Source: Scyliorhinus canicula
Taxonomy: Eukaryota
DNA: 64,000 bases
NCBI RefSeq assembly: GCF_902713615.1
Contig: NC_052157.1
Span: 61,344,146 to 61,408,145, forward strand
Direction: 5' to 3'
The position numbers and the translations under genes were made by a program. Of this stretch, positions 14,835-61,799 are shown one piece after another. Every line of letters starts with the position of its first letter. The first letter of the stretch is position 1. Under the pieces are notes generated by a model. That model searched no databases and was not told the DNA's origin. It worked only from the letters and a program-made list of their open reading frames with translations.

Positions 14835-15191
14835 TTGGACTGTCACAAGAGTGGAAAGCCAACATTCCAGAAAAGTTGACAGCGGAGAAAGGTTCCTGTG
14901 TACAGATACCATGTCATTACAGTTACCCAATGCACTTGGCAAGCCGACAGCGAGTTGGAATCTGGTATTACTATAAGCGTCGAACTACAGCCTTTCATTC
15001 CAAGGATCAGAATGTTATATCACCACAGTTCCAGCATCGGACCCGGCTGTCTGGAGACCTGAATGATGGCGACTGTTCCCTGATTATAAGCAACATCGGA
15101 CTGCAAGATGTAGGAAGATATTATTTCAGAATAGAATTTGATGCCAGTAATAAAATCACCTACAAACCTGGAACCAGGCTTCAGGTTTCTG
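14835..15191 (+). CDS. Siglec V-set exon V1, intact, phase 1-1, 357 bp
   Basis: ctctctgcag acceptor and GTAAGT donor; GSCVQIPC, GIW, DCSL (E-strand Cys) and YYFRIE (essential Arg) Siglec signature. Confidence 0.9.
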
Positions 15192-15350
15192 GTAAGTGCT
15201 GTGTTATATAATTCCTCAACAATTCACATTCAATATTCAATGGGAAATAATACATCCAAGTGTTTGATTTGCTTGTATTGTGGCTGTGTTAACCAGCGTC
15301 ACTGCTTTTAGTGATTTTCTATTTCTGCTCCCAGATCCAATGAAAATTTC

Positions 15351-16040
15351 GGGCGGGATTCTCCCGCAATTGGCTGGGCGGCCCGTACCGGCGCCAAGGG
15401 CGGCACGAACCACTCCAGTGTCGGACCACCTGGAAGTTGCGGAATCCTACGTACTTCCGGGGGCTAGGCCAGCGCTGGAGGGGTTGGCGTCGCGCCAACC
15501 AGCGCCGAAGGACCGCCACTGGCCGGCGTGAGTTGGCACACGCGCAGGACTGCCAGCGTGTTCTGGCACATGCGCAGAACCGCTTCCGTGTTTCCTGCGC
15601 ATGCGCAGGGGGTTTCTTCTCCACCCCGGCCATGGCAGAGCCTTACAGAGGCCGGCGCAGAGGGAACGAATGCCCCCGCGGCACAGACCCGCCCGCGGAT
15701 CAGTGGGCCACGCCACCGTGGCCCCCCTCCCCCCCGGGCCGGATCTTCTGCGCCCCGCTCGAGGACCCCGCTAGCCGGCCGACAAGCCAGGTCCCGCCAG
15801 GATAGACCATGTCCATTTCACGCCGGCGAGACTGGCCGAAAACGGGCGGCCGCTCGGCCCATCGGGGTCCGGAGAATTACTGGAATGGCAGCTGCCAACG
15901 GCCCACGACCAGCACGGCGTGATCTTTGCCCCCACCCGAAAAACCGCCACCGGAGAATTCGGCAGCTGGCGTCGGAGTGGCGGGGCGGGATTCACGCCGC
16001 CCCCCCGGCAATTCTCTGACCGAGCAGGGAGTCGGAACAG
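15351..16040. mobile_element. Harbinger-type MITE, apparently chimeric, right end missing
   Basis: Starts GGGCGGGATTCTCC; about 97% identical to 23012 onward up to ~15655, much less afterwards. Confidence 0.75.
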
Positions 16041-16235
16041 GCGCTGAGGACCCTGGTTCGAATCCCAGCCCTGGATCATTGTCCGCGTGGAGTTTGCACA
16101 TTGACCCCTTGTCTGCATGGGTTTCACCCCTACAACCCAAAGATGTGCAGGTTAGGTGGATAGGCCACGCTAAATTGCCCCTTAATTGATAAAAAAATGT
16201 AAAAAGTTAAAATTTAAATTTAAAAAAAGAAAGAA
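16040..16235 (+). mobile_element. HE1/V-SINE short form, 5' truncated
   Basis: GGTTCGAATCCC B-box, AAGATGTGCAGGTTAGGTGGAT V-domain, A-rich tail. Confidence 0.75.
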
Positions 16236-16239
16236 AACA

Positions 16240-17912
16240 AAAGGTGTTGCCAGTTAGGTTGGAAGAGTGTCTTCTGCAGGTGATTGGAGACGATGAGACG
16301 AGGTTCGTAAAGGATAGGCAGGTGTCTTTTAACATGCACTATTTGTTAAATATGGTGCTGTCCCCATCAGAGAGAAGGGAGCCGGAGGTGGTGGTGGCGC
16401 TGGACACGGAGAAGGCATTTGAACTTGTAGAGTGGAGTTATTTGTTTGCAATGTTGGGGAGATTTTGGATTGGGCCTAAGTTTGTGGCCTGTGTCAAGTT
16501 ATATAGGGTACCGAAGGCACAAACAAGGTGAATTCGGGGTACTTTAAGTTACATAGGGGAATGTGGTAGTCGGGGTGTGGAACGCCCTGCCTGCAACAGT
16601 AGTAGACTCGCCAACTTTAAGGGTATTTAAGTGGTCACTGGATAGACATATGGATGAAAATGGAATAGTGTAGGTCAGATAGGTTTCAGATGGTTTCACA
16701 GGTCGGCGCAACATCGAGGGCCGAAGGGCCCGTACTGCGCTGTAGTGTTCTATGTTCTATGTTCTATGTGGTCGGGGTGCCCATGTCCTCCATCCTGTCT
16801 GCGCTGGTGATAGAGCTCTTGGCCACTGTACTGAGGTGCGCAGATAAGTGGAAGATGATGGTCGGGGGAGCGGGGGTGGGGCGGGGTTCGTGGATCATAG
16901 GATGTTTCTGTAGCCTGATGATTTGTTGTTGTACATCTCCAACCCAGGTTCTACAGTGGGGATATAATGGAGCTGCTCAGGAGATTTGGGGTGTTTTCAG
17001 GTTATAAATTGAATTTGGAAAGGAGTGTTTTCTGGTGTCTTCTCCGGGAGCAGGAGCCGGTCTGGGGAGGGTTGCCATTTATGGTGGCAACAACCCACTT
17101 TAAGTACCTGGGAGTGCAGATTGCGATTGGACCCGGTTTCATAAATTGAATGTCATGAGCCTGGTGGGTAGGGTCGGGGCGGATTTATTGAATTGGGATA
17201 ACCTTCCCTATCATTGGCAGGCCGGATGCAGGCAGTGAGGTTGAACATTTTGCCACGGTTTTTATTCTTATTTCAGTGCCTGTCGGCCTTTTAGCCGAAA
17301 ACATTTTTTATGAGGGTGGCACTGTTGCTCTTTTCGTTTGTTTGGGCAGGTAAAGTAGCAAGGATTAGGAAGAGGGTGTTTCAGAGAGGATGGCAGTCAG
17401 GGAGTCTGGCCAATCCTAACCTGTTGTATTATTATTGTGCAGTGAATGCCAAGAAGTTACAGGGTTGGGGAAGGGAGACGGAGGCTTTGTAGGTGATGAT
17501 GGAAGCAGGCTCTTTTTAGGGATCGGAGTTGCGGGCACTGGTAACAGTATCGCTCCCGTTCGTCCCAGGAAAGTATTTGGGAGTCCGATGGCGGTAGCCA
17601 CGCTGAAGATATGGATATATTTTGGTCGCACATTAGGTTCATGGCGGGGTGGATGTCGATCTGACGGAATCATGTGTTTGAGCCGGAGAGGCGGGATGCT
17701 ACGCTCCAGGGATGGGATGAGCCAGTTAGGTGGCGGAGATGAAGGACTTATTTTTAGAGGGACGATTCGCGAGTATGGAGGAATTGATGGAGAAGGTTGG
17801 AATTCCGCGGTGGAGGCCTTTGGGTATGTGCAGCTATGGGAATTTGCAAAGAAAGTGTTCCCAATTTTTCAGATGGTGCCGCCTTCTTCGTTGTTGGAAG
17901 GGATGCTGACAG
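16240..17912 (+). mobile_element. Degenerate L1 ORF2 remnant containing a CR1 3' fragment (~16577-16770)
   Basis: VVVALDTEKAF, GYKLN, FKYLG and LPRFLF-like motifs; the insert ends in (GTTCTAT)n like the CR1 at 5969. Confidence 0.75.
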
Positions 17913-18114
17913 TGTAGTGATCTGCATATCTGTATGTACACAAGGGGTTAATATATAGGCATACCAGCTAAGTAATCATTAATGGGCAGCACTAGAGATG
18001 GAAAAAGACAGACTCAAGCCAAGATCCGTCTCTTCGTAAGGACAGTGACTAGTGACCAGAGGTAGAGAGAGACAGCTCAGTGCAGGGGTAGTTAATCATA
18101 GTTAATTCTTATTC

Positions 18115-19114: not shown

Positions 19115-19752
19115 GGGTTGGATTCTCCGCCCCCGCCGGCTGCCGAGTTCTCCGGCGGCGGGGATTTGGCAGGGGGCAGAAATCGCTCCGGTTGGGGGGC
19201 CATTGGCAGCGGCCCCCTCGGCGATGCTCCGGCCCGCGATGGCCTATTGGCCGCCCGTTTTTGGCCGGTCCCGCCGGCATATGTTACGACAGGTACTTAC
19301 CGGCAGGACCTGGCTCCACGGGCGGCCTCGGGGGAGGGGGGGGGGCAGCGGGGGGATCTGGCCCTAGGTGTTCCCACATGGTGGCCTGGCCTGCGACCGG
19401 AACCCACCGATCTACGGGTGGGCCTGTGCCGTGGTGGCACTCTATTCCTCCACGTCGGGCGCTATAACAGTCCGCGATGGCCAATGCGGAGATGACCCCC
19501 TTGGCACATGCGCTGGGATGACACCAGCACACCCTGGCGCTCCTGCGCAGGCGCCAACTCGCACCGGTCAGCGGAGGCCCTTCGGCGCAGGTTGGCGTGG
19601 CGCCAAGCCCCTTCCTTGCCGGCCGGCGCAGCTCAAACCACTCCCGCGCTTCTGGATTCCGCATCTTCAGGGTGGCCCGACGCCGGAGTGGTAACACGCC
19701 ATTTCTTCACGCCAGAGTTGCCCGCCTCGCCGGTTTTTGAAGAATCCCACCT
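19115..19752. mobile_element. Harbinger-type MITE, 638 bp, in Gypsy gag
   Basis: TIRs GGGTTGGATTCT and AGAATCCCACCT, 3-bp TSD CAG; removal restores gag codons ATC AGA GAC CAG ATT GTA (IRDQIV). Confidence 0.88.
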
Positions 19753-22080
19753 CAGATTGTACATGGATTATGTGATGAGTGCCTCCGAGAATCATTGTTA
19801 AAACAGCAAGATTTAAAGCTGAAAATCTGAATTCAAACGTGTTCATCTCACGAACAAAGTGAAAACAAATATAATGAGTTTTACGACCATGAAAAGGGCC
19901 CACAAGTCCACCACGAGGTTGAGGCTGTTAAAATGGTGTCATAGGCAGCCAAGAAGCACATTTCAAACGACAGCTGTCCTGTGTGTGCACACTCCATCCG
20001 GGACATGCACACATTGCACAAAAATGCGAGACTGAAGAAAAGACGTCTGTGCATGTGCGAACGTGTTTAATGCGTCAGAGAGACGATGTCATGACATGCC
20101 ACCGATGTGGCAACGCCAACTTAAAAGGAAAATGTCCGACTCAAGGCAAACAATGTTTAAAGTGTGTAAAACTCAATCACTATGCCTCACAATGCAGATC
20201 TGCAGTGCAATTTAAAACTCCGAAACCAAAACAAAGGAACATCAACATTCGCAGTGTGGATTCATCGGAGCATAAAAAATCTGAATACAATTATTCTTCA
20301 GAAGAGGACAATTACTCATTAGAAAACACGCCTTTCGTGGGAACAATTGAAAAAAGTGAGGAACTTAAAGCAACGACCAGCACTCCCCAATGATAGACTC
20401 TAGCAATGAATGGACTTCAACAATGCAAGTTAACCATTTTCCAATCCTGTTCAAGCTTGACACTGTGGCTTCAGCCAACCTGCTAACAAGCAAAGTTCTC
20501 CACTCTATTCCAGGAGAACATGAGATAATACCTGCTGCATGTAGGCTGAAAGACTACAATGGTAATCAGATCACATCAATGGGATTGTGCCATCTTCAAG
20601 TCAAAAACTTTAATTTGTGGAAAACGACAAATCATCACTGTTAGGTGCTCAGGCTTGCAAAGATTTGCGGCTTGTTCAACAAATTTTTATGAATACTCAG
20701 AATACATCACGCATGGAAGATGAAATCCAGCAGATGCATCAAGAATACCCTGACGTATTTAAAGTTATGGGCACTTTACCTGACCAGTACAAGGTTTTGC
20801 TAAAAAGAGATGCAGCACCTGTAATTCATCCGCCTAGGAAGGTTCCAGCTCCTTTGCGAGAGAGGTTGAAATTAGCATTTGAAAGGCTGCAGTCACAAGG
20901 AATCATCTCTCGAGTCACGCAGCCGACTGACTGGGTCAATCCTCTAGTATGTGTTCAGAAACCATCTGGAGATCTTCGAATCTGTTAGATCCAAAGGATT
21001 ACTGAACAAAAACATTTGTAGGAAACATTACCCTATCCCCAAGCATGAAGAGATCACATGCGAGATGGCGAATGCTCGCATCTTCACTAAACTCGATGTT
21101 TCGCAGGGCTTCTGGTGGATGGAGCTTGACGCCTCGAGCAGATTGTTGTGCACATTCAATACTCTATTTGGATGCTTCTGCTTTAACCGCATGTCCTTGG
21201 GAATAATCTCCACCTCAGAGATTTTCCATAGGATAATGGAGCAGATGACTGAGGGCATCGATGGTGTAAAAGTCTATGTCGACGACAATTATATGGTCCA
21301 CAACATTTTGTCGTTTGAAGAAGATGTTTCAAAGAATCCATCAATATGGATTTAAACTCAACCACTCAAAGTGCACATTTGCACAAACATCTTTAAAATT
21401 CTTGGGAGATACAATATCATCTCAAGGTGTCAGATCTGATGATGCGAAAATCTCTGCGATCCAGAATATGAAAACGCCACATGATAAAAAATCTGTGTTA
21501 AGATTTCTGGGATTTGTAAATTTATTGGGCACATTTATCTCGAATCTGTCCACGAGGACGTCAGCTTTACGCAATCTGATAAGGAAGACCACTGATTTTG
21601 AATGGACACAATGTCACCAAAATGAATGGGTGGATCTCAAACATCAACTGATAACTGCACAAATTCATACCTTTTTTGACCCAACTAGGCCGACCAAGAT
21701 CTCCCAGTGACGCCAGTCAGGATGGGATAGGCGCAGTTCTTCGACAACAGAATGATTAATCTGATTGGGTTCCAGTTGCATAAGCTTCCAGGGCTATGAC
21801 TGCAACAGAGTGCAAATATGCACAGATAGAAAAGGAATGTCTCGGACTACTCACTGGCAATACTGAAATTCCACGTGAAACATTTCCTGATGTTTCAGAT
21901 GGTGCTGCCTTCTTTGTTGATGGAAGGGATGTTGGCAGTAACGGGGTGGACATTCGGCGATTTATGGGAGGATGTTGGTGGAGGGTAGAGTGTCTTTTGA
22001 GCCAGTCAAGGCCAGGTGGGAGGAGAAGCTGGAGTTGGCGCTGGAGGAGGGGTTGTGGTGTGAAGTGCTGAGAAGGGTGA

Positions 22081-22256
22081 ATAATAATAATTGCTTATTG
22101 TCACAAGTAGGTTTCAATGAAGTGACTGTAAAAAGCCCCTAGCTGCCATATCCCGGCACCTGTTTGGGGAGGGCGGTACGGGAATTGAACCTGTGCTGCT
22201 GGCATTGTTCTGCATTACAAGCCAGCTGTCTTAACCCACTGTGCTAAACCAGCCCC
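22081..22256 (-). mobile_element. tRNA-derived SINE (family 2), duplicate of 14421-14595
   Basis: Same sequence and context as in copy A. Confidence 0.8.
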
Positions 22257-22495
22257 ATGGCAGAAGACTGGCTCTTAACTAAATAGATTCTGAAGACCAT
22301 GAGCCAATGTAGAATACACTTGTCCACTCCTGTATTCAGGATTCTTTTCTATCCATTGTAAAACTTTGGGGAGTTCCTTTTATGTCCTGTAGATTCCACA
22401 CTGCAGACATGTGCACCAGTGTTGGAGCGGATAGATATCGGGTTTAGTGGATCTACAAACTATCCTGTGTTAAATATTGATATTTCTGTCTGCAG

Positions 22496-22852
22496 TTGCA
22501 CTGTCACATGAGTGGAAAGCCAACATTCTAGAAGAGTTGACAGCAGAGAACGGTTCCTGTGTACAGATTCCATGTCATTACAGTTACCCAATGCACTTGG
22601 CAAGCCGACAGCGAGTTGGAATCTGGTATTACTATAACAGTGGAACTACAGCCTTTCATTCCAAGGATCAGGATGTTATATCACCACAGTTCCAGCATCG
22701 GACCCGGCTGTCTGGAGACCTGAATGATGGCAACTGTTCCCTGATTATAAGCAACATCGGACGGCAAGATGTAGGAACATATTATTTCAGAATAGAATTT
22801 GATGGCTGTAATAAATTCACCTACAAACCTGGAACCAGGCTTCAGGTTTCTG
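22496..22852 (+). CDS. Siglec V-set exon V2, intact, phase 1-1, 357 bp
   Basis: ctgtctgcag acceptor and GTAAGT donor; GSCVQIPC, NCSL, YYFRIE, NKFTY; 17 nt differences from V1. Confidence 0.9.
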
Positions 22853-23011
22853 GTAAGTGCTGTGTTATATAATTCCTCAACAATTCACATTCAATACTCA
22901 ATGGGAAATAATACATCCAAGTGTTTGATTTGCTTGTATTGTGGCTGTGTTAACCAGCGTCCCTGTTTTTAATGATTTTCTATTTCTGCTCCCAGATCCA
23001 ATGAAAATTTC

Positions 23012-23713
23012 GGGCGGGATTCTCCCGCAATTGGCTGGGCGGCCCGTACCAGCGCCAAGGGCGGCACGAACCACTCCAGTGTCGGACCACCTGGAAGTTG
23101 TGGAATCCTACGTACTTCCGGGGGCTAGGCCGGCACTGGAGGGGTTGGCGTCGCGCCAACTAGCGCCGAAGGACCGCCACTGGCCGGCGTGAGTTGGCAC
23201 ACGCGCAGGACTGCCAGCGTGTTCTGGCACATGCGCAGAACCGCTGCCGTGTTTCCTGCGCATGCGCAGGGGGTTTCTTCTCCGCCCCGGCCATGGCAGA
23301 GCCTTACAGAGGCCGGCGTGGAGGGAAAGAGTGCCCCCACGGCACAGACCAGCCCGCAGATCGGCGGATCCCCATCGCAGGCCACCGTGGGGGCCCTCCC
23401 CGGAGCCAAATTCCCCCCACGCCCCCCTGAGGACGCCGCTAGACGGCCAACAAGCCAGATCCTGCCGGGATGGGCCATGTCCATTTCACGCCGGCGGGAC
23501 TGGCCGAAAATGGGTGGCCGCTCGGCCCATCGGGACCGGAGAATTGCCAGGGGGGGCCACTGCCAACTGCCCCCCGACCGGCGCGGCGTGATCCCCGCCC
23601 CCACCCGAAAACCGGCACCGGAGAATTCGGCAGCTGGCGTCAGAGCGGCAGCGTGGGATTCACGCATCCCCCCGTGATTCTCCAACCCAACGGGGGGTCG
23701 GAGAATCCCACCC
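23012..23713. mobile_element. Harbinger-type MITE
   Basis: TIRs GGGCGGGATTCTCC and GGAGAATCCCACCC; flanking triplets do not match (TTC versus CAT). Confidence 0.8.
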
Positions 23714-23719
23714 CATGGG

Positions 23720-26039: not shown

Positions 26040-26174
26040 TCCTGAAAGATGGCGACTCTTCCCTGATTATAAACAATATCAGCCGGGAAGATGCAGGACC
26101 TTATTATTTCAGAATAGGATTTGACAAACGTCCCAGCCATTGTTATCACCCTGAATTCTGGCTCAATGTTTCGG
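26040..26174 (+). pseudogene. Siglec V-set exon V3, 3' fragment only
   Basis: LKDGDSSLIINNISREDAGPYYFRIGF...LNVS then GTAAGT; E-strand Cys lost; 5' part replaced by L2 sequence; downstream intron homologous to those after V1, V2 and V4. Confidence 0.8.
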
Positions 26175-28759
26175 GTAAGTGCTGGGTTATAATTATCCAA
26201 CAATTCACATTCAACACTCAATGGGAAGTAATGTAAACTGTGACATTTATAAATTGGAATCATTTCTTGTTTTCAAACTCAGACTTATAGTTTGTTCCAA
26301 GTCACAATTTAAAAGGGAACAAATTGGTGACTCATTCAAAAGGATAGTTTGCTGATAAAGGTTAATTTATTTGTCTGCATGATTACTGATATACCGCAAG
26401 CACAGATTTAAAATGATGACAGGGAAATTAAAATGGTTACTGATTGAACAGCCTGGTAAAGAAGAGAATAGCAAATAATAAAATGGAAATTGCAGTGTCA
26501 GGGTTAACAGAATGGGCATGCCAATATATGACATAGATAATGATGTATCATTGAAACCGGTCAGTTATATATTATATTCTCTCTCTCCCGAGAGGGGAAG
26601 GTCACATGTCCAGCTGAAACCCCACCACTTGAAGATGCTCGCTCCCATATCCTTCCCCCAAGAATTCCCTCATCAACATATACCATAATTTACATTACAG
26701 CACCATAAAGGAATTCGTTAGCACCGTCCATTATAAAGTCAGTCAGGGGATTTCCTCTGTTTGGAATGATGTCGCTCATGGTGAGGATGACTCAACAGCA
26801 AATTCGATTTAGTTTCCAGAAATCGAATTTCATCTTGGAAAGGTGCATCAGTGCTGATCACTTCTCCAGTTCCCACAGGAACTACAACAACATCAGTGGC
26901 AAAAATACTTGCCACGGACTGCCCCCGGTTCTCTAAATAGGTTGTTTCTTCTCAAGTGATCTCAATGTTTCTTCAGTTTTTTACCTTGAACTTCGACTTC
27001 ATACAATACCGGGCCCATCCTCCCAACTTTGACCCACCCCCAAATCGTTAGCATATACTAGATCATCCACTTTGATCGTTCTCTCAGGCTTTGGAGAATC
27101 ATGTGACTGTCTCACAGTCTAATTTGCCTCCATCCTCCCCATAAAATTTGGAAAAACGATGGGCATGATTTAACGAAAAAGTTCCAAAGGGCACGATTCA
27201 GTGGCCTCGTTGCGCTCGAGCAAGACAAGGCCGGTGAATAGTGGGACCGACCAAAAGTGAGAACCGCGCCGGGCCGCAAAACGTTTGTGATGGAACCGGC
27301 CCACTCCCGTAGGCAAAAACGGAATCATGCCAGAGCAATAAGCCCGGGGGCACTGGGCTTGCTGCCCCTGTGCTTGGAGAAGAGTGGGGCACTCTCAGCT
27401 GGGGAGATCCACCATGGGATGGGGGCGGGAGGGGGTGCTCCGCTGAGGGGGAACTGCGCGCGGCTCTGCAATGCCAAACCCTGGATCATTGGTGCCCGTT
27501 CTGGGGGCAAACCCTGCCCCTGCCTGTATGCCCCACCAACCACCCTTAACCACTGATCATGGAGGCCTCAGGCCATGTGGTTGAAGACGAGTGCGAATAA
27601 GGAATTCGCAATCGCAGTGAAGTGAGCATTCCACACAACCCAAGTGGATTCCCGTGGGTAGGCGAGCCATGTAGCAAGTTGGAGTTATTGCCCAGCATCT
27701 CAATCAGACCATGATGCCTGGTCATTCTGCCAGAACACTGCGGGAGGCAACAGCAGCCACATGCCAGAGGGTGGGTGAGTGCCATGGGGAGGGGGCCAGC
27801 ATCCGGGGATCCATCGGCAGGGCGTCCCGGCTGGGGGGGTGGTTTCAATGGGGAGGATGGAGGGTCCCGGGGCTGAGCCACCACTGTGTGTCAGTCTAGC
27901 ACCCTCTCCCAATTCCTTACAGATATTGAACTGTATGGATACTGCTCCACACCATGAGGGCCCAGCAGCCCATCAGTGTGAGACCCAATGGGGGAGGTCC
28001 AAGACAGCCCAAGTTGTACAAGTGATGCACTATCAATTACCACAAAGACGAGAGTAATCTCTAATAATCGAGGCTTTATTGAGCAAAGATATTGTGCCTC
28101 CTGTTGCTGCTACCAGAATGGCTGCAGCACCGGCGAGCACACACATTTATACACCGCCTACTGGGCAGAGCCAGCAGGCAGGGATTTACCCATGTACCTC
28201 TAGTATATGAGTCTCACCGTACTACATATAATACAGCTAGTGGTGACTGCCATACTCATCCGCTGTTAAAAAAAGAATCCGGCGGGGGTACTGGAAAAGA
28301 TTTACAAGTTCAGTCTGTCGGGGGCCTTGACCCTCCTCTGTGATCGCCTCAGTCCTGGAGGTGATGTGGGCGCCGACTTGGTCACCTGCCACTCCGGGAG
28401 CGTGTTGTCCTCATCTTCGTCACCTCTGAGTGGAACCATGAGAGGACGGATCCTCCTGGGGCTGGGGGCTGCAGTGAGGTTCGCTGGGGGGAGGGTGAGT
28501 GGCGCAGGGGTGAATGAGAAAACCGGAGGAGGGGGTGGGGTTGGTGTCGGGTTGGGGGCCACGGGTGGGGATCCAGCGGGTGCCAGGTCCCGGAGGGAGA
28601 CTGTGTCCTGGCGTCCGTCGGGGTGCGCCACGTAGGCGTACTGCGGATTCGCGTGGAGGAGGCGGACCCTTTTGACCAGAGGGTCCGACTTATGGGTCCG
28701 CACATGCTTGCGAAGGAGGACTATGTGATGAACGGTATTTACCTTTAATACCTTGCCCT

Positions 28760-45790: not shown

Positions 45791-45799
45791 TCAAAACCC

Positions 45800-46845
45800 A
45801 GCCCTTAAAAGGGTTCGTTACCACAGTGGGACTGCTCTCTCCTGGTTCCATTCCTTTCTATCTAATCATTACCAGCGAATCATTTGCATAGCTTTGCAAC
45901 ATCAAATGAAAAGTGTTAGTTATCGCATGTATACTGACGACACCCAGCTCTACCTCACCCCCACCTCTCTTGACTCTTCCACTGTTGTTTAATTATCAGA
46001 CCTCTTATCCAGCGTGCTACAGAAGATAAACATAGATTACTTCCAAATAAATATTGGGAAGACTGAAGCGATTGTTTTCAGTCCCCATTCCAAGCTCCGT
46101 TCACCAGTGACCGACTCCATCCCTCTCGCTGGCAAGTCTCTGTGATAAACCAAACTTTTGACAAGTTTGGCGTCACATTTGATTCTGAGATGAGTTTCCG
46201 AACTCATATCCCAGCATCCCTAAAACCGCCTATTTCCACCTTCATAACATTTTATGACTTCACCCAGTATCAGTTTGTCTGCTGCTGACACTCTCATCTA
46301 TGCCTTCTCTCCACGCTCAACTATTCCAGCAGACATTCTACCCTGCATAAACTAGAGGTCTTCCAAATATCTGCTGCCCGTGTCTTAACTTGCACCAATT
46401 CCACTGACCTCTCACCTCTGTGCTCACTGACCTAGACTAGCTCCTGGTCAAGCAAAGACTTAATTTCAAAATTCTCGTCCTTATTTCCTAAAGTTTGAAA
46501 TCTCCTCCAGCCCTACAACCTTCCGACATCTCTGTGCTCCTTCCATTCCCGACTCTTGAGCATGCCCCAAATTCCCACCATTGGCGACTGTGCCTGGGGC
46601 CCTCAGCTCTGGAATTGACACCTTAAGTCTCTCCACCTCCCTTTCTTTCTCCTTCTATTTCTCTCGCACTGTTCCTTTTAAATGCTCCTTAAAAACTTAC
46701 CTCTTTGACTGAGCTTTTGACCACCTGTCCCAATATCTCGGTCTGTGCCTGGCTGTCACTCTTTGTTTTATGATGCTCCTGTGCAGCACCTTGGGATATT
46801 TAAATATGTTAACATTAGTCTGTAAATATCAGTTGTTGTTGTTCT
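45800..46845 (+). mobile_element. L2-type LINE 3' remnant
   Basis: YTDDTQLYL motif, NIGKTEAIVF, (GTT)n tail. Confidence 0.7.
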
Positions 46846-47233
46846 TTCCCCCTCTACCCCAGTTCGAGTCTTCTTTCTGAGGTAATATACAACCTCCTTA
46901 TTTTTCTTTCCCAAATAACGTTTTTAATTTGAATTTAGCGAATGCCAATCCCCAAGTCCAAGCATTAATCTCCTCATTTACTGAGTTTACTCTGTAGAGG
47001 GGACGTTCCTTCATAATGTGTTGTATTGTTTGTCATTCCACAATTGCAAAAGGGGTTTGAGGCCCCAGCTGTTGGAGGTTTGCTGCACAGGGTGCTGCCG
47101 AATCCTGACCTCTCCTGAACATGTTTAGCAAGGCACACATTTACCTGAGAACTTCAAGTACTCGAGCCTGCTCCGTCATGAAAACTCTGTCTAACTCAGC
47201 CTTGAATACATTCAATGTCCCACAGCCTCCACA

Positions 47234-47513
47234 ACAGTTATCAATCGTGTCTGGGAAATCAATCGAGAGGCGGAGTCTGGTTTAATGAGCAATAGGGAAG
47301 ATCGCAGCTAGCCTTTCACTCCAAGAATCACAATCACGAGTTGCCACGGTTCCGCCACCGGACCAGGCTGCCTGGAGACCTGAAAGATGGCGAATGTTCC
47401 CTGATAATAAACAATATCAGGCAGGAAGATGCAGGACCTTATTATTTCAGAATAGAATTTTGACAATGGCCTCAGCCTTAGTCATCAACCTGTTACCCGG
47501 CTTCATGTTTCTG
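47234..47513 (+). pseudogene. Siglec V-set exon V4, pseudo-exon
   Basis: ..GGVWFNEQ*GRSQLAFHSK..GDLKDGECSLIINNIRQEDAGPYYFRIEF; TAG stop, +1 T frameshift, 5' end and acceptor missing, GTAAGT donor kept. Confidence 0.85.
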
Positions 47514-49527: not shown

Positions 49528-49821
49528 ATTTCACAGATAAACCCAGGATATTTCCGGCTGAAATTATTGCAGGAAAGCGTGTGGACATAAGCTGCACCTT
49601 CAACACAACGTGCAGTGGAATAGCACCTGTCTTAACCTGGGACACTCCCACTGACGTACCTGGATCAGTCTCAAAGACAGTAACTCAGCATGGCGTCGCT
49701 CTGACCTATACTTCTGTTCTGACCCTGATCCCATCACTCAGACACCACGGACAAAATCTCACCTGTGGACTGAGATATCCATCTGTTTCATCGGAGCGGA
49801 CCCTCGTACTAACTGTGCAAT
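49528..49821 (+). CDS. Siglec domain 2 C2-set exon, 294 bp, phase 1-1
   Basis: ttgtcag and GTAAGT sites; SCTFNTTCSG..P.LTW carries the extra Cys expected to bond the V domain; NLTC. Confidence 0.9.
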
Positions 49822-51830: not shown

Positions 51831-52112
51831 TCTCACCACAGAATCTCTCAATGACTTCTCTTGATATGATTAACGCTTCATGGATCAATATAATTGAGGG
51901 GAATTCTACAGTGATAATCTGCTCTGTCGAGAGCTTCCCAGCTTCTAACCTGACGTGGAGACATCTTAATGTCACAATGAACAGAACAAGTTCCAACAAT
52001 GAGCTGTGGTTGGTGATTCCTCAAGTTACATCCAGGGACACTGGAGACTATGAGTGTGCGGCAGAGAATGAACATGGAGCAATGGAGGGGTCCATAGCCA
52101 TCACTGTGGAAT
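51831..52112 (+). CDS. Siglec domain 3 Ig exon, 282 bp, phase 1-1
   Basis: tttttag and GTGAGT sites; ICSVESFPASNLTW..DTGDYECAAENEHG. Confidence 0.9.
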
Positions 52113-52834
52113 GTGAGTGTACACAGACCTCAACATCGCACATACACATATGCACACAGACAAATACACAGATGATCAGCGACCCATTCACAGCATCTTA
52201 ATCATTCATTCATTATCACCACAGTCTTAGCGGAGCCATTGGCATTGTCTTGTTTCTTCACTGGTTATCTTCAATTCGCCAACAATCCATGTCCCTATGT
52301 TATCCGCCCATCCAATTTTTCTTCTCCTCTTCTGATTTTTTCTCTCAGTTTCTCCTTCAATTGGTGTCAAGACAAGGCTGTCAGGTCTTTTCTCACCTTC
52401 GTACTTGACTATCTTTCTCTCTCTGACTGTACTGAGAAACCCTTTAAATTCCTGAACTTCTCGTTTTGATCGAAGACACTCATGGGTCTTTCTGCCCATT
52501 CAGCTGATTCCCAGCATCCTCCTCCAAACCCACATTTCAAAAGTTGTTCTCCTCTGTCCAACTCTCGCATTCACAGAGTGGAACACTCCACACTAGTGAC
52601 TGGGCTAGAGCTTTATTCAGCTTTGTGCTGATCCTTTTGCACTTCAGTTAGTGGTTGTGCCTCTTGCCGTGTCTAATTAACTGGGATTTCATTCTTGGAT
52701 GTAATTTTGGTCTTATCATCAAGTTATTAGATGCCGTTACGTCTTTCTCAGTGCAAACAGATGTATCTCCAAGAGACTGTGGGATTTACAATGTCTATTT
52801 CATGCAGTTGAATGGACAGGATCACAGATGCACT

Positions 52835-53045: not shown

Positions 53046-53073
53046 CTGAAGTGCTGCCTGTCACAGACACATA

Positions 53074-54481: not shown

Positions 54482-54621
54482 CAGCTCTGAGCACGACTGC
54501 CATTGGTGGGGCAACAGAAACATGAGGATGGCCAAGAGGCTGGAATTGGAGGAGCATGGAGATCTTGGAGGGTTGTGGGATGTGGGGATGAGCTTCTGAT
54601 TCTCCTCTGTTCCTGTTCCAG

Positions 54622-54897
54622 ATCCCCCACAGGAGACGATGGTGTCCATCAGCAGACCCTCAAGTGGAATAAGGGAGGGAAACAGTATCACATTAACCTG
54701 CTCTAGTGAAAGTGTCCCACCGATATCCCATTACACCTGGTTCAGGATCGAGGGGAACACCAGCATCCAGTTAAACACAAGTAGCCGCACTCTCTCCTTC
54801 ACTTCTGTAACACGGGAGAATGATGGAAGTTTCTACTGCACAGTGAGGAACCCACTGGGTAACAGCACCTCCAACATTACCCACCTGGATGTGGAAT
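54622..54897 (+). CDS. Siglec domain 4 Ig exon, 276 bp, phase 1-1
   Basis: ctgttccag and GTAAGC sites; EGNSITLTCSSESVPP..YTWF..DGSFYCTVRNPLG. Confidence 0.9.
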
Positions 54898-56808
54898 GTA
54901 AGCATTTAACACCATCTGTCTCTTACTTGCTGTAGTTTAGCATAACTAGTATAATCCTTGTTGCTTTTTTGACCTTGTGCCTTTCAGAGATACATAAGGA
55001 GTTATTATAACAGTGAAGCTCAGAGGATATGTTAGATTTTTGAAGAAGTACCCTAAAGGAGGAGAGCGATATAAGTTGACAGATTTATCTGGGCATGGGT
55101 GCCCAGGGGGTGGAGGGGGGAGAGGAGGAAGGGAGATTAGGGTTTACGGCCCCAGTTAGCTGAAAGGATGCTTACGAAGCTGGAATTGGATGAGGTTCGG
55201 GTCTGGGAGTAGGTTACAGAGAAACGGAGGATTCAAGGGGCTGGATGAGGAGCATAAATGTTAAGAGTTGTCAGGAAAGGTGAACGTTAAAGAGATCAAG
55301 ACTGTTGAAGGGGCTGAATTAGGCTGCAGAGGTATCAAGTGTTATTGGGCTGGAGCAAGTCACAGAGACAGAGAGAGTAGTAGAGCCTGAAGGTGATGAC
55401 AGAGAAACAGAGGATGTTTAAGTGCTGGAGTGGGTTACAGACATAGGTGTGGTGATCGTAGATCTGAGTAGATGCAATACAACTGAGCAAGCACTAGAGG
55501 GAGCACAGGAGAGCTATATATACACAGGGACAGGAAGTGACGACACACTTCACGGAAGGCAGAACTCATAGCAGGACAGACACACAAACAGGCAGCATTT
55601 GAGGTAGCCGTAAGTTAAGGTCTGAAGGGAGAACAAATTCACAATAAAGCATCTTCTCCACATTTGAGACTACGAGCTTTATTCAGACACGAGGAACAAC
55701 ACATGGTACCAAGGAGTGACTTCAGACGCTTACTACAGGACAACTCAGCTGCAGATACAGAAAGAACAAAATGGCATGGAAATCTCCTACTGGACATTCG
55801 ACTTGGGAAGACATCGCTAATTCGAGGATGTAGCTTGGATACCCACCTCAGCTGGACATGACTGGCAATGTAAGAAATGTCTGGAAAATGTTTAAACAAT
55901 GGTTCGATTTATATATCATAGCTAATGATGTAGCAGCAGCCTGAGACGAAATTAAAATAGCAAAGCTCATCGCAGGACATGAAGCTAGGAAAGTATATAA
56001 TGGATTTAAATACTCAAAAGATGAAGACAGCAACAGCTTACAAACAATACTAAACAAATTTGAAGAGTACTGTAAGAAATTTGAACAGCACGGTATGCTC
56101 AGAGGCCAAACTGCACAGAGACTGAGTGATGCAAAACTCAAACAATCAAAATCAGAACAGAAAGGGTTCAGTCAAGAAAAGTAAAGATCAAAAAGAAGAA
56201 ATAACTTGAATTTTTCACAAAGCCAAAATGCTGAAATCCAGTCCAAATCGAAAGGAAAAGGTAACTTACAACTTTCAGAAAGAAAAAACGCTGAAATCCA
56301 CGATAAAATGGCGTCGGACCACATTTTGCAGTCTCGGGCAGACAAAGAACTACAAACTGCGTCTGCGCATGCGCAGGACACGGAAGCCGCGCATGCGCAG
56401 TTACAATCACCCGTTTTGCGTTCTGCGCATGCGCAAGCTGCGCATGCGCAGTTTAAAAAAGTTTGCATTGCTGATCGTTATGCACATGCGCAAGCCGCGC
56501 ATGCACAGTGCACACAAAACCGCACAGTGAAGGAAGGTCGATTTGCGCATGCGCAGTTGATTCATACGCATGATGTCACGAGCGTCATGACGTCTGAACA
56601 TCCGGACCACGCCTACTTAAAAGGGAAATGCCCGGAAATTGAAAACAAAATACTTAAAGCTGTAAAACCAAATTTTCTTGCCTCAGAACACAAAAAAACG
56701 CCTGAACTTAAACCAGCAGTTAAAAACAACTCGCACAACACCCTGGAAAAAGCAGTCTGCACCACCCAAAGTGAAGAGATCAAAAAGAAATCAAAAACAA
56801 CAAAAGAT

Positions 56809-57180
56809 GATTTGTTTTTCGAAGAATACTACTCAGACATGGCTGAGTTATTCGGATATGCTTATCACAGCATCAGCGACACGGTCGCAACGTTCAACAC
56901 AAATCTACTCGTGGTAGATTAATCCAACCAAGGTGATTTGGTTTTCGAAGAATACTACTCAGACATGGCTGAGTTATTCGGATATGCTGATCACAGCATC
57001 AGCGACGCGGTCGCAAAGCATAACACGAATCAACTCGTGGTAGATGAATCCAACCAAGATGATTTGGTATTGGAAGAATACTACTCAGACATGGCTGAGT
57101 TATTCAGATATGCTGATCACAGCATCAGCGACACGGCCGCAAAGCTCAACACGAATCTACTTGTGGTAGATGAATCCAAC
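56809..57180 (+). repeat. Three tandem 126-bp (42-aa) units
   Basis: GATTTG..GAAGAATACTACTCAGACATGGCTGAG at 56809, 56935 and 57061. Confidence 0.92.
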
Positions 57181-57579
57181 ACCATGGTGCCATAGCAGAT
57201 CGTCGATACATTGGATGACAGCAATGCCCAAGAAGAAGACGACGCCACGCAGAGAGCACAGAAAGACTCCACACAGAGAGCGATGACAGGCTCCACAGTG
57301 CGAGTGATGAAAGACTCCAAAAGGGAAGCAAGCAAACACTCCCTGGCGAACACCATGCATGAACAAGACCATGAAGGTCAACCCGCTGTATCTGAGCAAC
57401 CGCAAGCAGACTATGAAAGTCTACCAAGCTCACATAATCAAAAAGAAGACACTGTACATCTACCCACTGCATGCGAAAACAGTGACAAGGTGATCACACT
57501 CGACATACAGGAGGTACAGGATCAGAGCGAGACTGACAGTTCGCAGCTTGTCTGTACAGAAGCACAGAGTCAGGCCACC

Positions 57580-57965
57580 CAAGAATCCAGAGAGACAACG
57601 CCAATGGAAACCATGCAGACTTTGACTCCAGAAGAGGAGCACCAAGAGTCCAGTGAGACCACGCCAAAAGAAAGCATGCAGATTTTGACTCCAGAAGAGG
57701 AGCACCAAGAGTCCAGTGAGACAACATCAACAGAAACCATGAAGATTTTGACTCCAGAAGAGGAGCGCCAAGAGTCCAGAGAGACCACGTCAAGTGAAAT
57801 CATGCAGATTTTGACTCCAGAAGAGGAGCACCAAGAGTCCAGAGAGACCACGTCAATTGTAATCATGAAGATTTTGACTCCGGAAGAGGAGCACCAAGAA
57901 TCCAGAGAGACCGCGTCAAATGAAATCGCAAAGAATTTGACTCCAGAAGAGGAGCACCAAGAAAG
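57580..57965 (+). repeat. Six tandem 63-bp (21-aa) units, LTPEEEHQES..
   Basis: TTGACTCCAGAAGAGGAGC at 57622, 57685, 57748, 57811, 57874 and 57937. Confidence 0.95.
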
Positions 57966-59514
57966 CAAAGACAAGGAATCAAATCCTCGACAAATGACTG
58001 ATGTCACCAGCATCGATGCAACATCAGATCATTCTCACCATTCTCGAGACGAAACGTTCAATGCAACAGATTCCACAAAGGACACTCGCACCAATAACTG
58101 TGACAATGACTCAAATTATCTACACGGGACACTCATTGAGCATAACAAGAAAAACAAAAGCCAAAAGAAGCACAGCAGAAACGAGAACAACAACAGCAAG
58201 AACAAAAGCAACATGCAGCGCGACAAGAACAACAAAAATCGCAAGAAGCACTGCAGAAACAAGAACAACAACAGCACCAACAAAAACTACAAGCACAACG
58301 ACAAAAACTACAAGAAGAACAACAAAACCAACAAGAAGCATAACAAAGATAGCGACAACAACAAAGACAGAAACGACAAAAACAGCAACAAGAACGGCAA
58401 CGAAAACAACAAAGACAGGAACGACAGAAACAACAGCAATGAAACAACGACTTGTACAAAATGGTACAACTCTGCACATGAAGGACAATGCCACAGCACA
58501 CTGCAAAACAATGACAAGACTACAAACATGCCATGGGATGACAATGAATCGCACAAACTCACATCTGCTCCAGAACAAGCAAGCACACCAGCTTTCAAGG
58601 CAGATGACATAATAAATCAATACCACAAGCACAGAAAAAAGTCCATGTCAGTCAACATCAGTGGTTCGACCATGCAAACATCTCGGGATGACGCATTGGG
58701 TACTTAAAATAACAAGGAACACCAACAACATTCACAACGGAGTTGCAATATCAATATCACCACGTCAACAACAACAAAAGAAAAAAACTCTGAACAAATT
58801 CATCAAGTTTCGACTCATAAATGTTTTTACTGAGTGGACTCATAAATATAAATTGGATTTGTAAAATATGCAATAGCACCATCACTTGTATAGATCCACA
58901 TATCATAAGTAACTGTTTTGTACAATTTTCCTTAACGATGTACAAAAAATATGTAAAGCAAAAACGGGGGATGTGGTGATCATAGATCTGAATAGATGCA
59001 ATACAACTGAGCAAGCAGTAGAGGGAGCACAGGAGAGCTATATATACACAGGGACAGGAAGTGATGACACATTTCACGGAAGGCAGAACTCGTAGCAGGA
59101 CACAGACACACAAGCAGGCAGCATTTGAGGTAGCCGTGAATTAAGCTCTGAAGGGAGAACAAATTCACAATAAAGCATCTTCTCCACATTTGAGACTACG
59201 AGCTTTATTAAGACTCGAGGAACAACACAATAGGGAGGGGACAAAGAGGGATATTGTAATGGGAGCAAATGCTGTTCAGTGAACAACAGGGTGTGATGAG
59301 TAAACGGGACTTGGTATGAGTTAGGAAACGGGCAACAGAGTTTGGGATGTGCTAAAGTTCATGGAGGTTGGAAGATGGGAGACCGGGCAGGAGAATATTG
59401 GAATATTCCAATCTGGAAGTAACAAATGCACCAATGAGTGTTTCAGTGTCAATTTTCTATCGTACACTCTTAACTTTGTTACTAAGTGTCCCATTGTTGT
59501 CATTTCCTCCTTAG

Positions 59515-59808
59515 ATGAGCCAGATATTTCCCAGGAGTCAAAGTGCTATCAGCAGTCAGAAGGGGTCACCTGCTTTTGTGTGTCCAATTCCAATCCACCT
59601 GGAGTCCTCACCTGGCACCTGCCTGCTGCCAACATTAGTGATGACCAAACACACAAACATGTTGTGTCACGTTCGGTCAGAGATGGGCATCTGGTGAATG
59701 GCTCCCTGATCCTGACGGGACTCCACAATGAGGAGGAAGTGACGGCATCCTGCTTGGTTCGAAACCCACATGGGGAAGCCATGTTCAAGGTGTATCTGTG
59801 GGCCAAAG
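59515..59808 (+). CDS. Siglec membrane-proximal domain 5 exon (MAG D5-like), 294 bp, phase 1-1
   Basis: cctccttag and GTGAGA sites; ESKC....VTCFCVSNSNP and SCLVRNPHG resemble the extra-Cys pattern of MAG D5. Confidence 0.88.
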
Positions 59809-59983
59809 GTGAGAGAATTGTTTGGGATTGATCTCCGCTCAGCTAGCTTGATCCTTAAACTCGAGAATTTCCTCCCTCACTCACTCCACCAGCACCTTTA
59901 AAATATACTTTACAACTAATCTCTTTGACCAAGCTTTTAATCATGTCAACACCTTGGTCAAATTCAATGGTGAGATCAAGATA

Positions 59984-60275
59984 CAAGGGGAGGTGGTGGA
60001 GTAGTGGCATTGACATTCAACTGGTGATCCAGGCACCCAGGGTAATGCTAAGGGGACTGGGGTTCAAATTCCATCACACCAGATAGTAACATTTGAATTC
60101 AATGAATATCTGGAAATAAAGTGTAGAGATAATCTGAAACCATTGTTGTGTTGTAAAGTGCCCTTTACGGAAGGAAATCTGCCATCTTTACCTGGCTTGT
60201 CCTATTGTGACTCCAGATATTGATTCTTAAATTCTGGCCCAGCCAGTGATGCCCACAACCGATGAATGGATTTTT
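59984..60275 (+). mobile_element. tRNA-like SINE (family 3), degenerate
   Basis: GGTGGTGGAGTAGTGG A-box-like and GGTTCAAATTCC B-box-like motifs. Confidence 0.55.
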
Positions 60276-60699
60276 TAAAAAGCATTTCTTCACACAAAGG
60301 CAAATGGAAATCTGGTAATCTCTCCCATCCCAAAACAGCTATTGCATTGAAAACGACTATTTTCAAAGTAGGATTTAATCCCCTGGGCTTTCAAGGGTTA
60401 ACAAGTAATTGGATCACATTTTCAAGATATTAATGAGAACAGATAGGGGTTGATTGAGAGAAAGTATTTCTTCAGGGAGTCTTGGACGAAAAAGCTGAAA
60501 CTAAAAATGTGAGGCATATTTTTCAGGCGGGAAATCAGGAAAACCTTTGACACTCAAAGGGTGGGAGAAATCTGGAACTTCTTTATCCAAACTAAAATCA
60601 ATATTCGATCAAATAGTTAATTTTAAATCTGAGTTTGTCAGATTTTTTTGGAAACAGAAGACAGTAAGGGAAATTTGGCCATTGGTGATTCTTGGAATC

Positions 60700-60970
60700 C
60701 CCACAGTGCAGGAGTCAATTCAGCCCATTGAGTCTGCATCAACTTTCCGAAAGAGCACTCTATCTAGATCCACTCGCCCGCCATATCTCCACATATTGAT
60801 CATGGCCAATCCACCTATCCTGCACATCTTTGGACTGTGGGGGGAAACCGGAAAGCCTGGAGGAAAATCACGCAGGCATGGGAAGCACGTGCAAACTCAA
60901 CACAGCCACCCAAGGCCAGAATCGAACCTGCATACCTCTCACTGTGAGGCAGCAGTACGAACCACTGTGC
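60700..60970 (-). mobile_element. HE1/V-SINE, degenerate, among CR1 3' scraps (~60280-61080)
   Basis: CATGGCCAATCCACCTATCCTGCACATCTTTGGACTG V-domain. Confidence 0.7.
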
Positions 60971-61702
60971 CATCAATCACAGAATAAGGTGATAGATCAG
61001 CCATGATCTCAATGAATAGTAAATCCAGTAATGGCAGAGGGGCTGAATGGCCTCTTCCTGTCCTGTGATCCTTCCTATGGTCCAATGTGTTAAGGGTCAA
61101 TCTTTTTACAGAGTGGACAGTGATAAACTGGAGCTTGACTTGATATTACATCGAAAAATATTATATATATAAATGTTACATATATTACATTGAGATGGAA
61201 GATTTCAATTCATAAATTGCTTAGACAGTCTCGAAACACTCCACAGTCAATTACATCATTTCAAAATGTGGTCACTGCTGTAATTTAGGAAACACAGCTA
61301 ATGATTTTTGCACAGCAAGATCCCACAAACAACAGTGCGATTGTGATCTGATCATTATTTTAATGAGATTGGTTGATGCATCCCGAGAGATTCCATACAT
61401 TTGGTCATCATTGCCCCTTCAGCAAAGCAAACTTTCCATCTTTTCCCGATCTGGGATGTATCCGTGACTCCAGTCTGAAATAGCAACATGGTTATTTTTT
61501 AACTCCCCTCCAAACTGGTCTCTAAGTGGTTCAGGAGGAAGGTCGCCCTCCAGATTCACAAGGAGAAACTGGGATTGGACAACAAATATAGGCATTGCTC
61601 GTGAATGAGTATTTACAAAATTGAGTGGAGGCATTGTTGCTCGAGATACATTGTAGCATCATTCTAAAAGTGCAGTGCAGTAATTAAAGGCTGTTTTTAC
61701 AG

Positions 61703-61799
61703 GTAGAAACTCTAATAAATGGACAGTAGGATTGCTCACAGCTGGGATCATACTGAGTGTATTTGTGGTTGGAATCTTAATCTTCTTGAATGTGAGGAA
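61703..61799 (+). CDS. Transmembrane exon, 97 bp, phase 1-2 (not in ORF track)
   Basis: gtttttacag and GTAAGT sites; (G)RNSNKWTVGLLTAGIILSVFVVGILIFLNVRK. Confidence 0.88.

What the first reader, a model, noticed from the sequence alone, without database searches (positions are those of the whole stretch)
14835..61799. Siglec gene with an array of four V-set (ligand-binding) exons feeding one C2x4-TM constant region
Seen: four V-set copies lie in tandem with no C2 exon or recognisable leader exon between them, followed by one intact D2-D5-TM set. V1 and V2 have canonical splice sites and are phase 1-1; joining either to D2 gives an open frame of about 533 aa. Known: Siglecs normally have one N-terminal V domain, and its extra Cys bonds D2. 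Inference: one upstream leader could choose V1 or V2 as alternative cassettes, or include both, diversifying glycan recognition on a shared stalk. This variable-exon/constant-region design is not one I know of for Siglecs.
Basis: partly seen in the sequence, partly recalled or inferred. Interest (0 to 1): 0.85.

Follow-up and report, generated by a model that had tools for sequence, protein, structure and literature searches.

The report
Catshark Siglec gene with spare V exons
A catshark immune sugar-sensor gene carries two working copies and two dead remnants of the exon for its sugar-binding head, and RNA shows that the first copy can be skipped, so one gene probably makes receptors with different heads.

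Summary
The sequence observation holds, but only two of the four V copies are usable exons. V1 (14835-15191) and V2 (22496-22852) are intact, phase 1-1, with AG/GT sites. V3 is a 150-nt fragment. V4 lacks its first 27 codons and has a TAG and a frameshift. D2-D5 and TM are intact, and no other Ig exon or leader lies in the window.

The locus is already a RefSeq gene of Scyliorhinus canicula (XP_038670875, 775 aa, 82 kb). Its model strings leader-V1-V2-D2-D5-TM and an ITIM tail. The leader and tail lie outside the window.

RNA contigs cover only the exon, not the flanking introns. A V2-exact contig begins with leader sequence (SYFLLSLL), so V1 is skipped in those transcripts. A 136-nt V1-exact contig is also present. 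No V1-to-V2 joint was seen.

V1 and V2 differ by 15 replacement and 2 silent changes, about twice the divergence of the flanks. Models with 2-5 V domains are common in sharks and rays, and a V-to-V joint is seen in RNA, apparently from the neighbouring gene.

Verdict: alternative V-exon use is partly supported, and the tandem V1-V2 form is not excluded. Human Siglec-12 is a two-V precedent. The scan noted similar tandem-V Siglec loci elsewhere in this genome.

The parts
14835..15191 (+). V1: intact Siglec V-set exon of the Va type, 357 nt, phase 1-1. It keeps the essential Arg (YYFRIEF) and three Cys.
   Evidence: 100% match to residues 14-132 of RefSeq protein P0155. A 136-nt exact RNA contig covers 14909-15044 in X2.
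22496..22852 (+). V2: intact duplicate of V1, with 17 nt differences (15 replacement, 2 silent). It carries a private extra Cys (S104C).
   Evidence: RNA contigs match V2 exactly at the 5' end (7/7 diagnostic letters, preceded by leader letters) and at the 3' end (6/6) in X2 and X3.
26042..26191 (+). V3: relic of a Vb-type V exon. Only the last ~44 codons plus the donor remain, and the E-strand Cys is lost.
   Evidence: Its flank 26041-26572 is 86% identical to 47379-47908.
47230..47513 (+). V4: Vb-type pseudo-exon 2 kb upstream of D2. The first 27 codons and the acceptor are missing. It has a TAG at 47293-47295 and a +1 frameshift near 47459. The donor GTAAGT is kept.
   Evidence: 83% identical to the Vb2 domain of P0151.
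49528..49821 (+). D2: C2-set exon with the extra Cys (TTC) expected for the V-D2 disulfide.
   Evidence: The D2-D3 joint 49821>51831 is seen in RNA contigs of X2 and X3.
51831..52112 (+). D3: Ig exon (Ig_3 / I-set).
54622..54897 (+). D4: Ig exon.
59515..59808 (+). D5: membrane-proximal Ig exon.
61703..61799 (+). Transmembrane exon. The membrane span has no charged residue.
13683..16036 (+). Copy A of the duplicated block around V1. Its upstream parts are 1-1304 and 5970-6808, split by later transposon insertions that include the LINE at 9406-13096.
19221..23702 (+). Copy B of the duplicated block around V2: a Gypsy-like element piece plus the V exon and 850 nt of intron. It is 94-97.7% identical to copy A.

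Best explanation
This is one inhibitory-type Siglec-family receptor gene of the small-spotted catshark (RefSeq XP_038670875/6, 82 kb).

Its first-domain V exon was duplicated recently together with a transposon-rich flank, about 2.7% divergence ago. That gave V1 and V2. Both remain intact, both are transcribed, and they have diverged mainly by amino-acid changes.

A single leader exon upstream of the window is spliced onto either V exon. V1 and V2 therefore act as alternative cassette exons that place different glycan-binding heads on one D2-D5-TM-ITIM stalk. A tandem V1-V2 form may exist as a minor or tissue-specific product.

V3 and V4 are dead remnants of a second V subtype (Vb). In paralogues, Vb forms a second V domain.

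Shown: the exon anatomy, the duplication, the leader-to-V2 joint, the presence of V1-specific RNA, and the excess of replacement changes.

Inferred: that V1 is joined to the same leader and to D2, and that the two heads differ in ligand specificity.
For: Anatomy:
- V1 and V2 are intact with strong, near-identical splice sites.
- Either V joined to D2 reads open for 533 codons.
- The RefSeq protein P0155 maps at 100% to V1, V2, D2-D5 and TM. Its leader MIGKSYFLLSLLQ is not in the window.

RNA:
- Depth is zero in both flanking introns and is confined to 14834-15191.
- A V2-exact contig carries the leader letters ATCTTACTTCCTCCTGTCACTTCTCCA (SYFLLSLL) without a break (X2, X3).
- A V1-exact 136-nt contig includes the private KRR codons (X2).
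- X2 holds 53% of the V1 words.
- Contigs that begin with the last 30 letters of the V exon run on into D2-like sequence.
- The D2-D3 joint is present in RNA contigs.

Selection:
- There are 15 replacement and 2 silent differences, giving dN/dS 2.2.
- Replacement sites diverged 5.4% against 2.7% in 1643 nt of flanks (p about 0.01-0.02).
- The changes are split 6 to 5 between the two lineages.

Relatives:
- Related 5-Ig genes in Carcharodon, Pristiophorus and Heterodontus have a single V.
- The neighbouring gene has RefSeq isoforms that use different V exons behind one leader.
Against: - No leader-V1, V1-D2 or V1-V2 joint was seen, so V1's partners are unknown.
- V1's 3' third was not found as exact RNA.
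- The V1-like 5' contig differs at 4 clustered letters, so it may be an allele or a paralogue.
- The evidence is from assembled contigs of one sample. Such contigs pop bubbles and drop minor forms.
- The tool's coordinates leave a one-letter ambiguity at the leader-V2 joint.
- RefSeq models only the tandem form.
- V2's private extra Cys would be unpaired in a V2-only protein but could pair with V1's spare Cys in a tandem protein.
- Nothing in the window enforces mutual exclusion, because including both exons stays in frame.
Confidence: 0.5

Rival explanations
1. The gene is a constitutive double-V receptor, as in the RefSeq model. The main product is leader-V1-V2-D2-D5-TM, and the leader-to-V2 transcript is a minor exon-skipping by-product.
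For: - The RefSeq model XP_038670875/6 includes both V exons.
- V-to-V joints exist in RNA, apparently from the neighbouring gene (X25).
- Tandem-V models occur in many sharks and rays.
- V domains that follow another V carry an extra Cys in 50 of 59 cases, against 11 of 41 for first V domains. V2 has a private extra Cys and V1 has none.
- Human Siglec-12 has two V-set domains (PMC7876704).
Against: - The V2 5' contig runs unbroken from the leader into V2. A comparably abundant V1-end to V2 joint would have split that contig.
- No loose end at either exon edge reads as a V1-V2 joint.
- The closest 5-Ig relatives in other sharks have a single V.
- V2 is a Va-type copy and lacks the conserved BC-loop Cys of true second-position V domains.
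Confidence: 0.25
2. The gene is a canonical single-V Siglec that uses only V2. V1 is an unused or rarely used recent duplicate that has not yet decayed.
For: - Only the leader-V2 joint was seen directly.
- V1-exact RNA is limited to one 136-nt contig in one run.
- V1's exact 5' patch and 3' third were not seen.
- Copy A has taken several transposon insertions that push V1 further from both the leader and D2.
Against: - V1 keeps its frame, splice sites, Cys and essential Arg.
- The excess of replacement changes is shared by both lineages, 6 to 5.
- The V1-specific KRR contig has depth similar to the V2 pieces, and no intron is covered.
Confidence: 0.15
3. V1 and V2 are two alleles of one exon that the assembly placed in tandem by mistake (uncollapsed haplotypes).
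For: - Each V would then be spliced straight to the leader, as seen for V2.
- An assembly gap (6977-7150) lies inside copy A.
Against: - V1 and V2 lie 7.3 kb apart in gap-free sequence from 7151 to 64000.
- The copies differ by 2.5-5%, by several kb-scale insertions, and in their outer flanks, which are not collinear.
- Another individual's RNA carries both V1-type and V2-type letters.
Confidence: 0.05

Closest known systems
Human/primate SIGLEC12 (Siglec-XII, S2V)
   Same: A Siglec with two N-terminal V-set domains that arose by exon duplication, followed by C2 domains and an inhibitory tail. An alternatively spliced truncated form and two splice variants are reported (PMC7876704 and its references 9, 10 and 16).
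   Different: - It arose independently, in mammals.
- Its standard product contains both V domains.
- Here the leader is seen joined directly to the second V.
- The two V exons here are only about 5% apart.
- Shark and ray paralogues carry up to 4-5 V domains.
CD33-related Siglecs
   Same: V-set domain with the essential Arg, C2-set domains, an uncharged TM, and a tail with an ITIM (LLYANI) plus a distal TEYAQI motif. The gene lies in a large rapidly evolving cluster.
   Different: Published surveys say fish lack CD33-related Siglecs (PMC7226832, a teleost-focused study). Orthology to the mammalian group was not tested here. This gene has four C2 domains.
Myelin-associated glycoprotein (Siglec-4)
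   Same: Best solved-structure match for V1 (E 1.6e-16), and the same V plus four C2 layout. RefSeq names the gene MAG-like.
   Different: Sialoadhesin matches V1 equally well. D2 matches CD33 better. The tail motifs and the multigene cluster do not fit a conserved single-copy MAG orthologue.
Alternative ligand-binding exons such as FGFR2 IIIb/IIIc (from general knowledge)
   Same: This compares how it works, not family membership. Duplicated internal exons encode alternative versions of a ligand-binding Ig module on a constant receptor body, and the choice is made by splicing.
   Different: FGFR2 swaps half a domain, and mutual exclusion is enforced. Here whole V domains are swapped, and inclusion of both stays in frame. 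Unlike the protocadherin or UGT1A variable exons, these V exons have no promoter or leader of their own in the window.

Membership tests
Siglec family | N-terminal V-set Ig domain with the conserved F-strand arginine that binds sialic acid | tested here: met
   Pfam V-set and Ig_CD22 hits. The R of YYFRIEF aligns with the Arg of MAG (YYFRGDL) and sialoadhesin (YNFRFEI). It is present in both V1 and V2.
Siglec family | Unusual Cys pattern: an intrasheet B-E disulfide plus a spare Cys in V matched by a spare Cys in D2 | tested here: met
   GSC, IPC and DCS in V1 and V2; ISC, TTC and LTC in D2. This is sequence pattern only, and the bonds were not shown.
Siglec family | C2-set Ig domains, a single TM and a tyrosine-motif tail | tested here: met
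   Pfam hits for D2-D5. TM exon. Tail motifs LLYANI and TEYAQI are in RefSeq protein P0155, encoded beyond the window.
Siglec family | Binding of sialylated glycans | not testable with these tools
   Needs recombinant V1-Fc and V2-Fc on glycan arrays.
Two-V Siglec (Siglec-12-like architecture) | Both V domains present in one mature transcript or protein | tested here: inconclusive
   Modelled so by RefSeq. No V1-V2 joint appeared in RNA contigs of 4 runs, and the leader-V2 joint was present. Contigs cannot prove absence.
Variable-exon / constant-region locus with alternative exon choice | Two or more functional variable exons, each joined alone to the same upstream and downstream exons | tested here: inconclusive
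   The leader-V2 joint is shown, as are joints from a V1/V2-type exon end (last 30 letters shared with at least one paralogous V exon) into D2-like sequence. Leader-V1 and V1-D2 joints were not seen. No leader lies between V1 and V2.

The most novel reading that the evidence does not exclude
Shark and ray Siglec-like genes may hold arrays of phase-1 V-set exons that are spliced in different sets behind one leader onto a constant C2-TM-ITIM stalk, some alone and some in tandem. One germline gene would then display a small repertoire of glycan-binding heads. A conserved extra Cys would lock stacked V domains together. This would be a splicing-based diversification of an innate immune lectin, and it has not been described for Siglecs.
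Probability: 0.3. Interest if true: 0.8.

Novelty: new variant of a known kind. Interest (0 to 1): 0.55.

Why it matters
Reviews describe Siglecs as having a single sialic-acid-binding V domain, with Siglec-12 as the lone exception. Fish are said to have only four conserved Siglecs.

This locus and its relatives show a different picture in cartilaginous fish. They have a large cluster of inhibitory Siglec-like genes whose V exons have multiplied. At least one gene can skip a V exon, and its two V copies are diverging by amino-acid change.

If the two heads bind different glycans, one receptor gene could tune self/non-self sugar sensing by splicing. The conserved extra Cys in second-position V domains also gives a testable structural rule for stacked V domains.

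Tried and rejected
- Leader search in the window by signal-peptide-like ORFs. The only good-looking candidate (17310) is a LINE ORF2 fragment. Searches by leader peptide and leader DNA found none.
- The in-frame ATG just before V1 (MLIFLSAV). It is absent before V2 and too short, so I rejected it as a start.
- Fetching the genomic locus for the upstream leader and for a great white shark relative. No DNA was served.
- Protein searches for transcript-derived fragments across the V1-V2 joint. There were no close catshark fragments and no candidates.
- Rfam scan of the window: no hits.
- A simple Ig-motif scan was too strict, so I replaced it with tblastn using 285 family proteins.
- Literature searches found nothing on shark Siglec V arrays.
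- I did not predict structures, because the tool returns no coordinates and so could not test the proposed disulfide.
Full report
**What is in the sequence**

The window is vertebrate DNA, 50% G+C, with one 174-N gap at 6977-7150. tblastn with the V and C2 translations finds four V-type copies and one copy each of D2-D5.

V1 (14835-15191) and V2 (22496-22852) are each 357 nt. Both are bounded by AG and GT, are in phase 1-1, and have no stop. D2 (49528-49821), D3 (51831-52112), D4 (54622-54897), D5 (59515-59808) and the TM exon (61703-61799) are likewise intact. V1+V2 gives 652.

V3 (26042-26191) holds only the last ~44 codons of a V exon, and its E-strand Cys is changed to Ser. V4 (47230-47513) lacks the first 27 codons and its acceptor. 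It has a TAG at 47293-47295 and a +1 frameshift near 47459. So two of the four copies are dead.

tblastn with 285 Siglec-family proteins finds no further Ig exon in the window.

**Family**

V1 matches V-set and the CD22-like first Ig domain in Pfam. Its best solved-structure matches are MAG (1.6e-16) and sialoadhesin (2.2e-16). The essential Arg and the N-terminal Trp align with these. D2 matches the second domains of CD33 and MAG. The Siglec Cys pattern is present in V1, V2 and D2.

**The duplication**

Self-comparison shows that copy B (19221-23702) equals copy A in three pieces: 1-1304, 5970-6808 and 13683-16036. Copy A has been broken by later insertions, including a LINE at 9406-13096. 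Most of the unit is a Gypsy-like element, followed by about 400 nt, the V exon, and 850 nt of intron.

Identity is 97.5% upstream of the exon, 95.2% in the exon, and about 96.7% in the next 490 nt. The exon has 15 replacement and 2 silent differences, giving dN/dS 2.2. This is not significant within the exon alone (p 0.38). However, replacement sites diverged 5.4% against 2.7% in 1643 nt of flank (p 0.01-0.02). With paralogues as outgroups, the changes fall 6 on V1 and 5 on V2, so neither copy looks like the decaying one.

V3 and V4 share an 86% identical flank. They belong to a second subtype, Vb (GNQSRGGVWFNE...). V4 is 83% identical to a Vb domain of the neighbouring gene.

**The gene is already annotated**

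An exhaustive HMMER search with V1 and a follow-up search identify the genome as Scyliorhinus canicula. Protein P0155 (XP_038670875/6, "myelin-associated glycoprotein-like", 775 aa) maps at 100% onto V1, V2, D2-D5 and TM.

P0155 reads leader MIGKSYFLLSLLQ, then V1, V2, D2-D5 and TM, then a tail with LLYANI and TEYAQI. The gene spans 81.7 kb. The leader and tail exons lie outside the window. Neither the leader peptide nor its DNA occurs in the window. RefSeq therefore strings both V exons in tandem.

**RNA evidence**

The RNA runs of this species that hold these exons are kept only as assembled contigs. Contigs laid on 46800-52600 show the D2-D3 joint 49821>51831 in X2 and X3. The D2 contigs keep this gene's private SGIAP codons, but elsewhere they carry the family-consensus letters. 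They are therefore alleles or mosaics produced by bubble popping.

Contigs laid on 14600-15290 at 90% likeness gave the following.
- Depth is zero in both flanking introns and is confined to 14834-15191. The signal is therefore spliced RNA.
- A 131-nt contig in X2 and X3 (one sample) carries all 7 V2-diagnostic letters of the first 105 nt. It is preceded by ATCTTACTTCCTCCTGTCACTTCTCCA, which reads SYFLLSLL plus CA. That is the leader of P0155.
- Because this leader is not in the window, it lies upstream of V1, and V1 is skipped in these transcripts. The contig is unbroken, so a competing V1-end to V2 joint is at most minor in that sample. The tool's coordinates leave a one-letter ambiguity at the joint.
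- A 153-nt contig matches V2's 3' part at 6 of 6 diagnostic letters.
- A 136-nt contig in X2 (14909-15044, depth 35) matches V1 exactly, including its private KRR codons. The sister run X3 keeps the V2-type letters there. This is what bubble popping does when two forms have similar depth.
- The 5' V1-like contig differs at four clustered letters (14873-14879). V1's exact 3' third was not seen.
- X2's 53% share of V1 words matches this picture.
- Contigs that begin with the last 30 letters of the V exon continue into D2-like sequence (...AAACCCAGGATATTTCCGG).
- No loose end reads as V2's start after a V end.
- In X25, a contig runs from a Va-type exon end into CACAAGAGTGGAAAGGTGAGACTCCACGAC (AQEWKGETPR), the start of a Vb exon in the neighbouring gene's protein P0001. 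V-to-V splicing is therefore real in this family.

**Family context**

Among 258 fetched proteins with Siglec-type V domains, 98 have two or more. Tandem-V models occur in Scyliorhinus, Carcharodon, Cetorhinus, Mustelus, Pristiophorus, Hemiscyllium, Rhincodon, Chiloscyllium, Hypanus and Mobula.

The neighbouring catshark gene has RefSeq isoforms that share the leader and the constant part but use different V sets. X1 has Va1-Vb1-Vb2-Vb3, and X3 has Va2-Vb'-Vb3.

V domains directly preceded by another V carry an extra Cys in 50 of 59 cases, 32 of them at one BC-loop column (YPSC). The figures are 11 of 41 for the first V of a tandem and 65 of 296 for other V domains. These counts are not phylogenetically independent. 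The pattern still spans sharks and rays, and it fits a disulfide to the spare Cys of the preceding V. That is an inference and was not tested.

V2 is a Va-type copy without that Cys, but it has a private Cys at S104C. V1 has none.

The relatives closest in the constant region have a single V (Carcharodon P0162, Pristiophorus P0176, Heterodontus P0179).

**Reading**

The gene probably once had leader-Va-(Vb)-D2-D5. The Vb exon decayed, leaving V4, with V3 as a stray fragment. Va was then duplicated.

The direct evidence favours V2 being used as the first and only V in many transcripts, with V1 also expressed. I therefore rate alternative cassette use from one leader as most likely (0.5). A mainly tandem V1-V2 product is next (0.25), then an unused V1 (0.15), then an assembly artefact (0.05). 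The artefact is unlikely because both copies sit in gap-free sequence and differ by insertions and 2.5-5% substitutions.

**Comparison and novelty**

Siglec-12 is described as the only Siglec with two V-set domains, and splice variants of it are reported (PMC7876704, PMC6288428). Fish are said to have four conserved Siglecs and to lack CD33-related ones (PMC7226832). I found no paper on shark Siglec V arrays.

The gene model itself is public, so the anatomy is not new. Three things are not described: the skipping of V1, the replacement-biased divergence of V1 and V2, and the Cys rule across elasmobranch multi-V models. Other first-stage notes of this scan flag similar tandem-V Siglec loci in the same genome. 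I did not test those.

**Limits**

- Contigs show presence, not absence.
- Close paralogues blur assignment of RNA contigs to this gene.
- The leader and tail DNA could not be fetched.

Noticed in passing
window 55448-59229: An LTR-bounded element lies in the D4-D5 intron. Its LTRs 55448-55703 and 58972-59229 are 94.6% identical. It carries a 498-codon ORF (57211-58707) full of ~21-residue repeats (ILTPEEEHQESRETT...) and a basic Asn/Lys-rich tail.
   Followed up: no
window 9406-13096: A LINE with long open frames (286, 265 and 763 aa) is inserted in copy A of the duplication and absent from copy B, so it inserted after the duplication.
   Followed up: partly
window 19983-20644; protein P0003: The S. 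torazame RefSeq model P0003 begins with the same Gypsy-like element ORF that lies upstream of V1 and V2 here, fused to a Va exon. The model looks like a transposon fusion artefact. It also shows that the element-plus-V unit predates the split of the two Scyliorhinus species.
   Followed up: partly
window 49528-49821: The reference D2 has five private residues (K, A, T, I, G) where all paralogues have N, T, S, T, R, and the RNA contigs of X2, X3 and X4 carry those consensus letters where they cover these positions. The X2/X3 contigs keep this gene's private SGIAP. This may be an allele, gene conversion or a contig mosaic.
   Followed up: partly
RNA contig of run X25 laid on window 14984-15191: A contig with a Va1-type body (IWHYDKSGTV, as in isoform X1 of the neighbouring gene) runs into the start of Vb' (AQEWKGETPR, as in isoform X3). 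Neither RefSeq isoform has this V-V combination. It could reflect combinatorial splicing or a contig mosaic.
   Followed up: no
window 50084-50190: A SINE-like piece (GGCGACTAGGGGCTTTTCACAGTAACTTCATTTGAAGCCTAC...) in the D2-D3 intron has RNA contig depth up to 5e5, so it is a very abundant repeat in transcripts. It has no Rfam match.
   Followed up: partly
proteins P0001-P0285 (HMM column 33 of the V domain): Second and later V domains of tandem-V Siglec-like models in sharks and rays almost always carry an extra BC-loop Cys (YPSC). First and single V domains lack it.
   Followed up: partly
window 34895-36470 and 62421-64000 (minus strand): Two copies of another LINE family, 83.7% identical. 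One lies in the V2-D2 intron and one lies after the TM exon.
   Followed up: no
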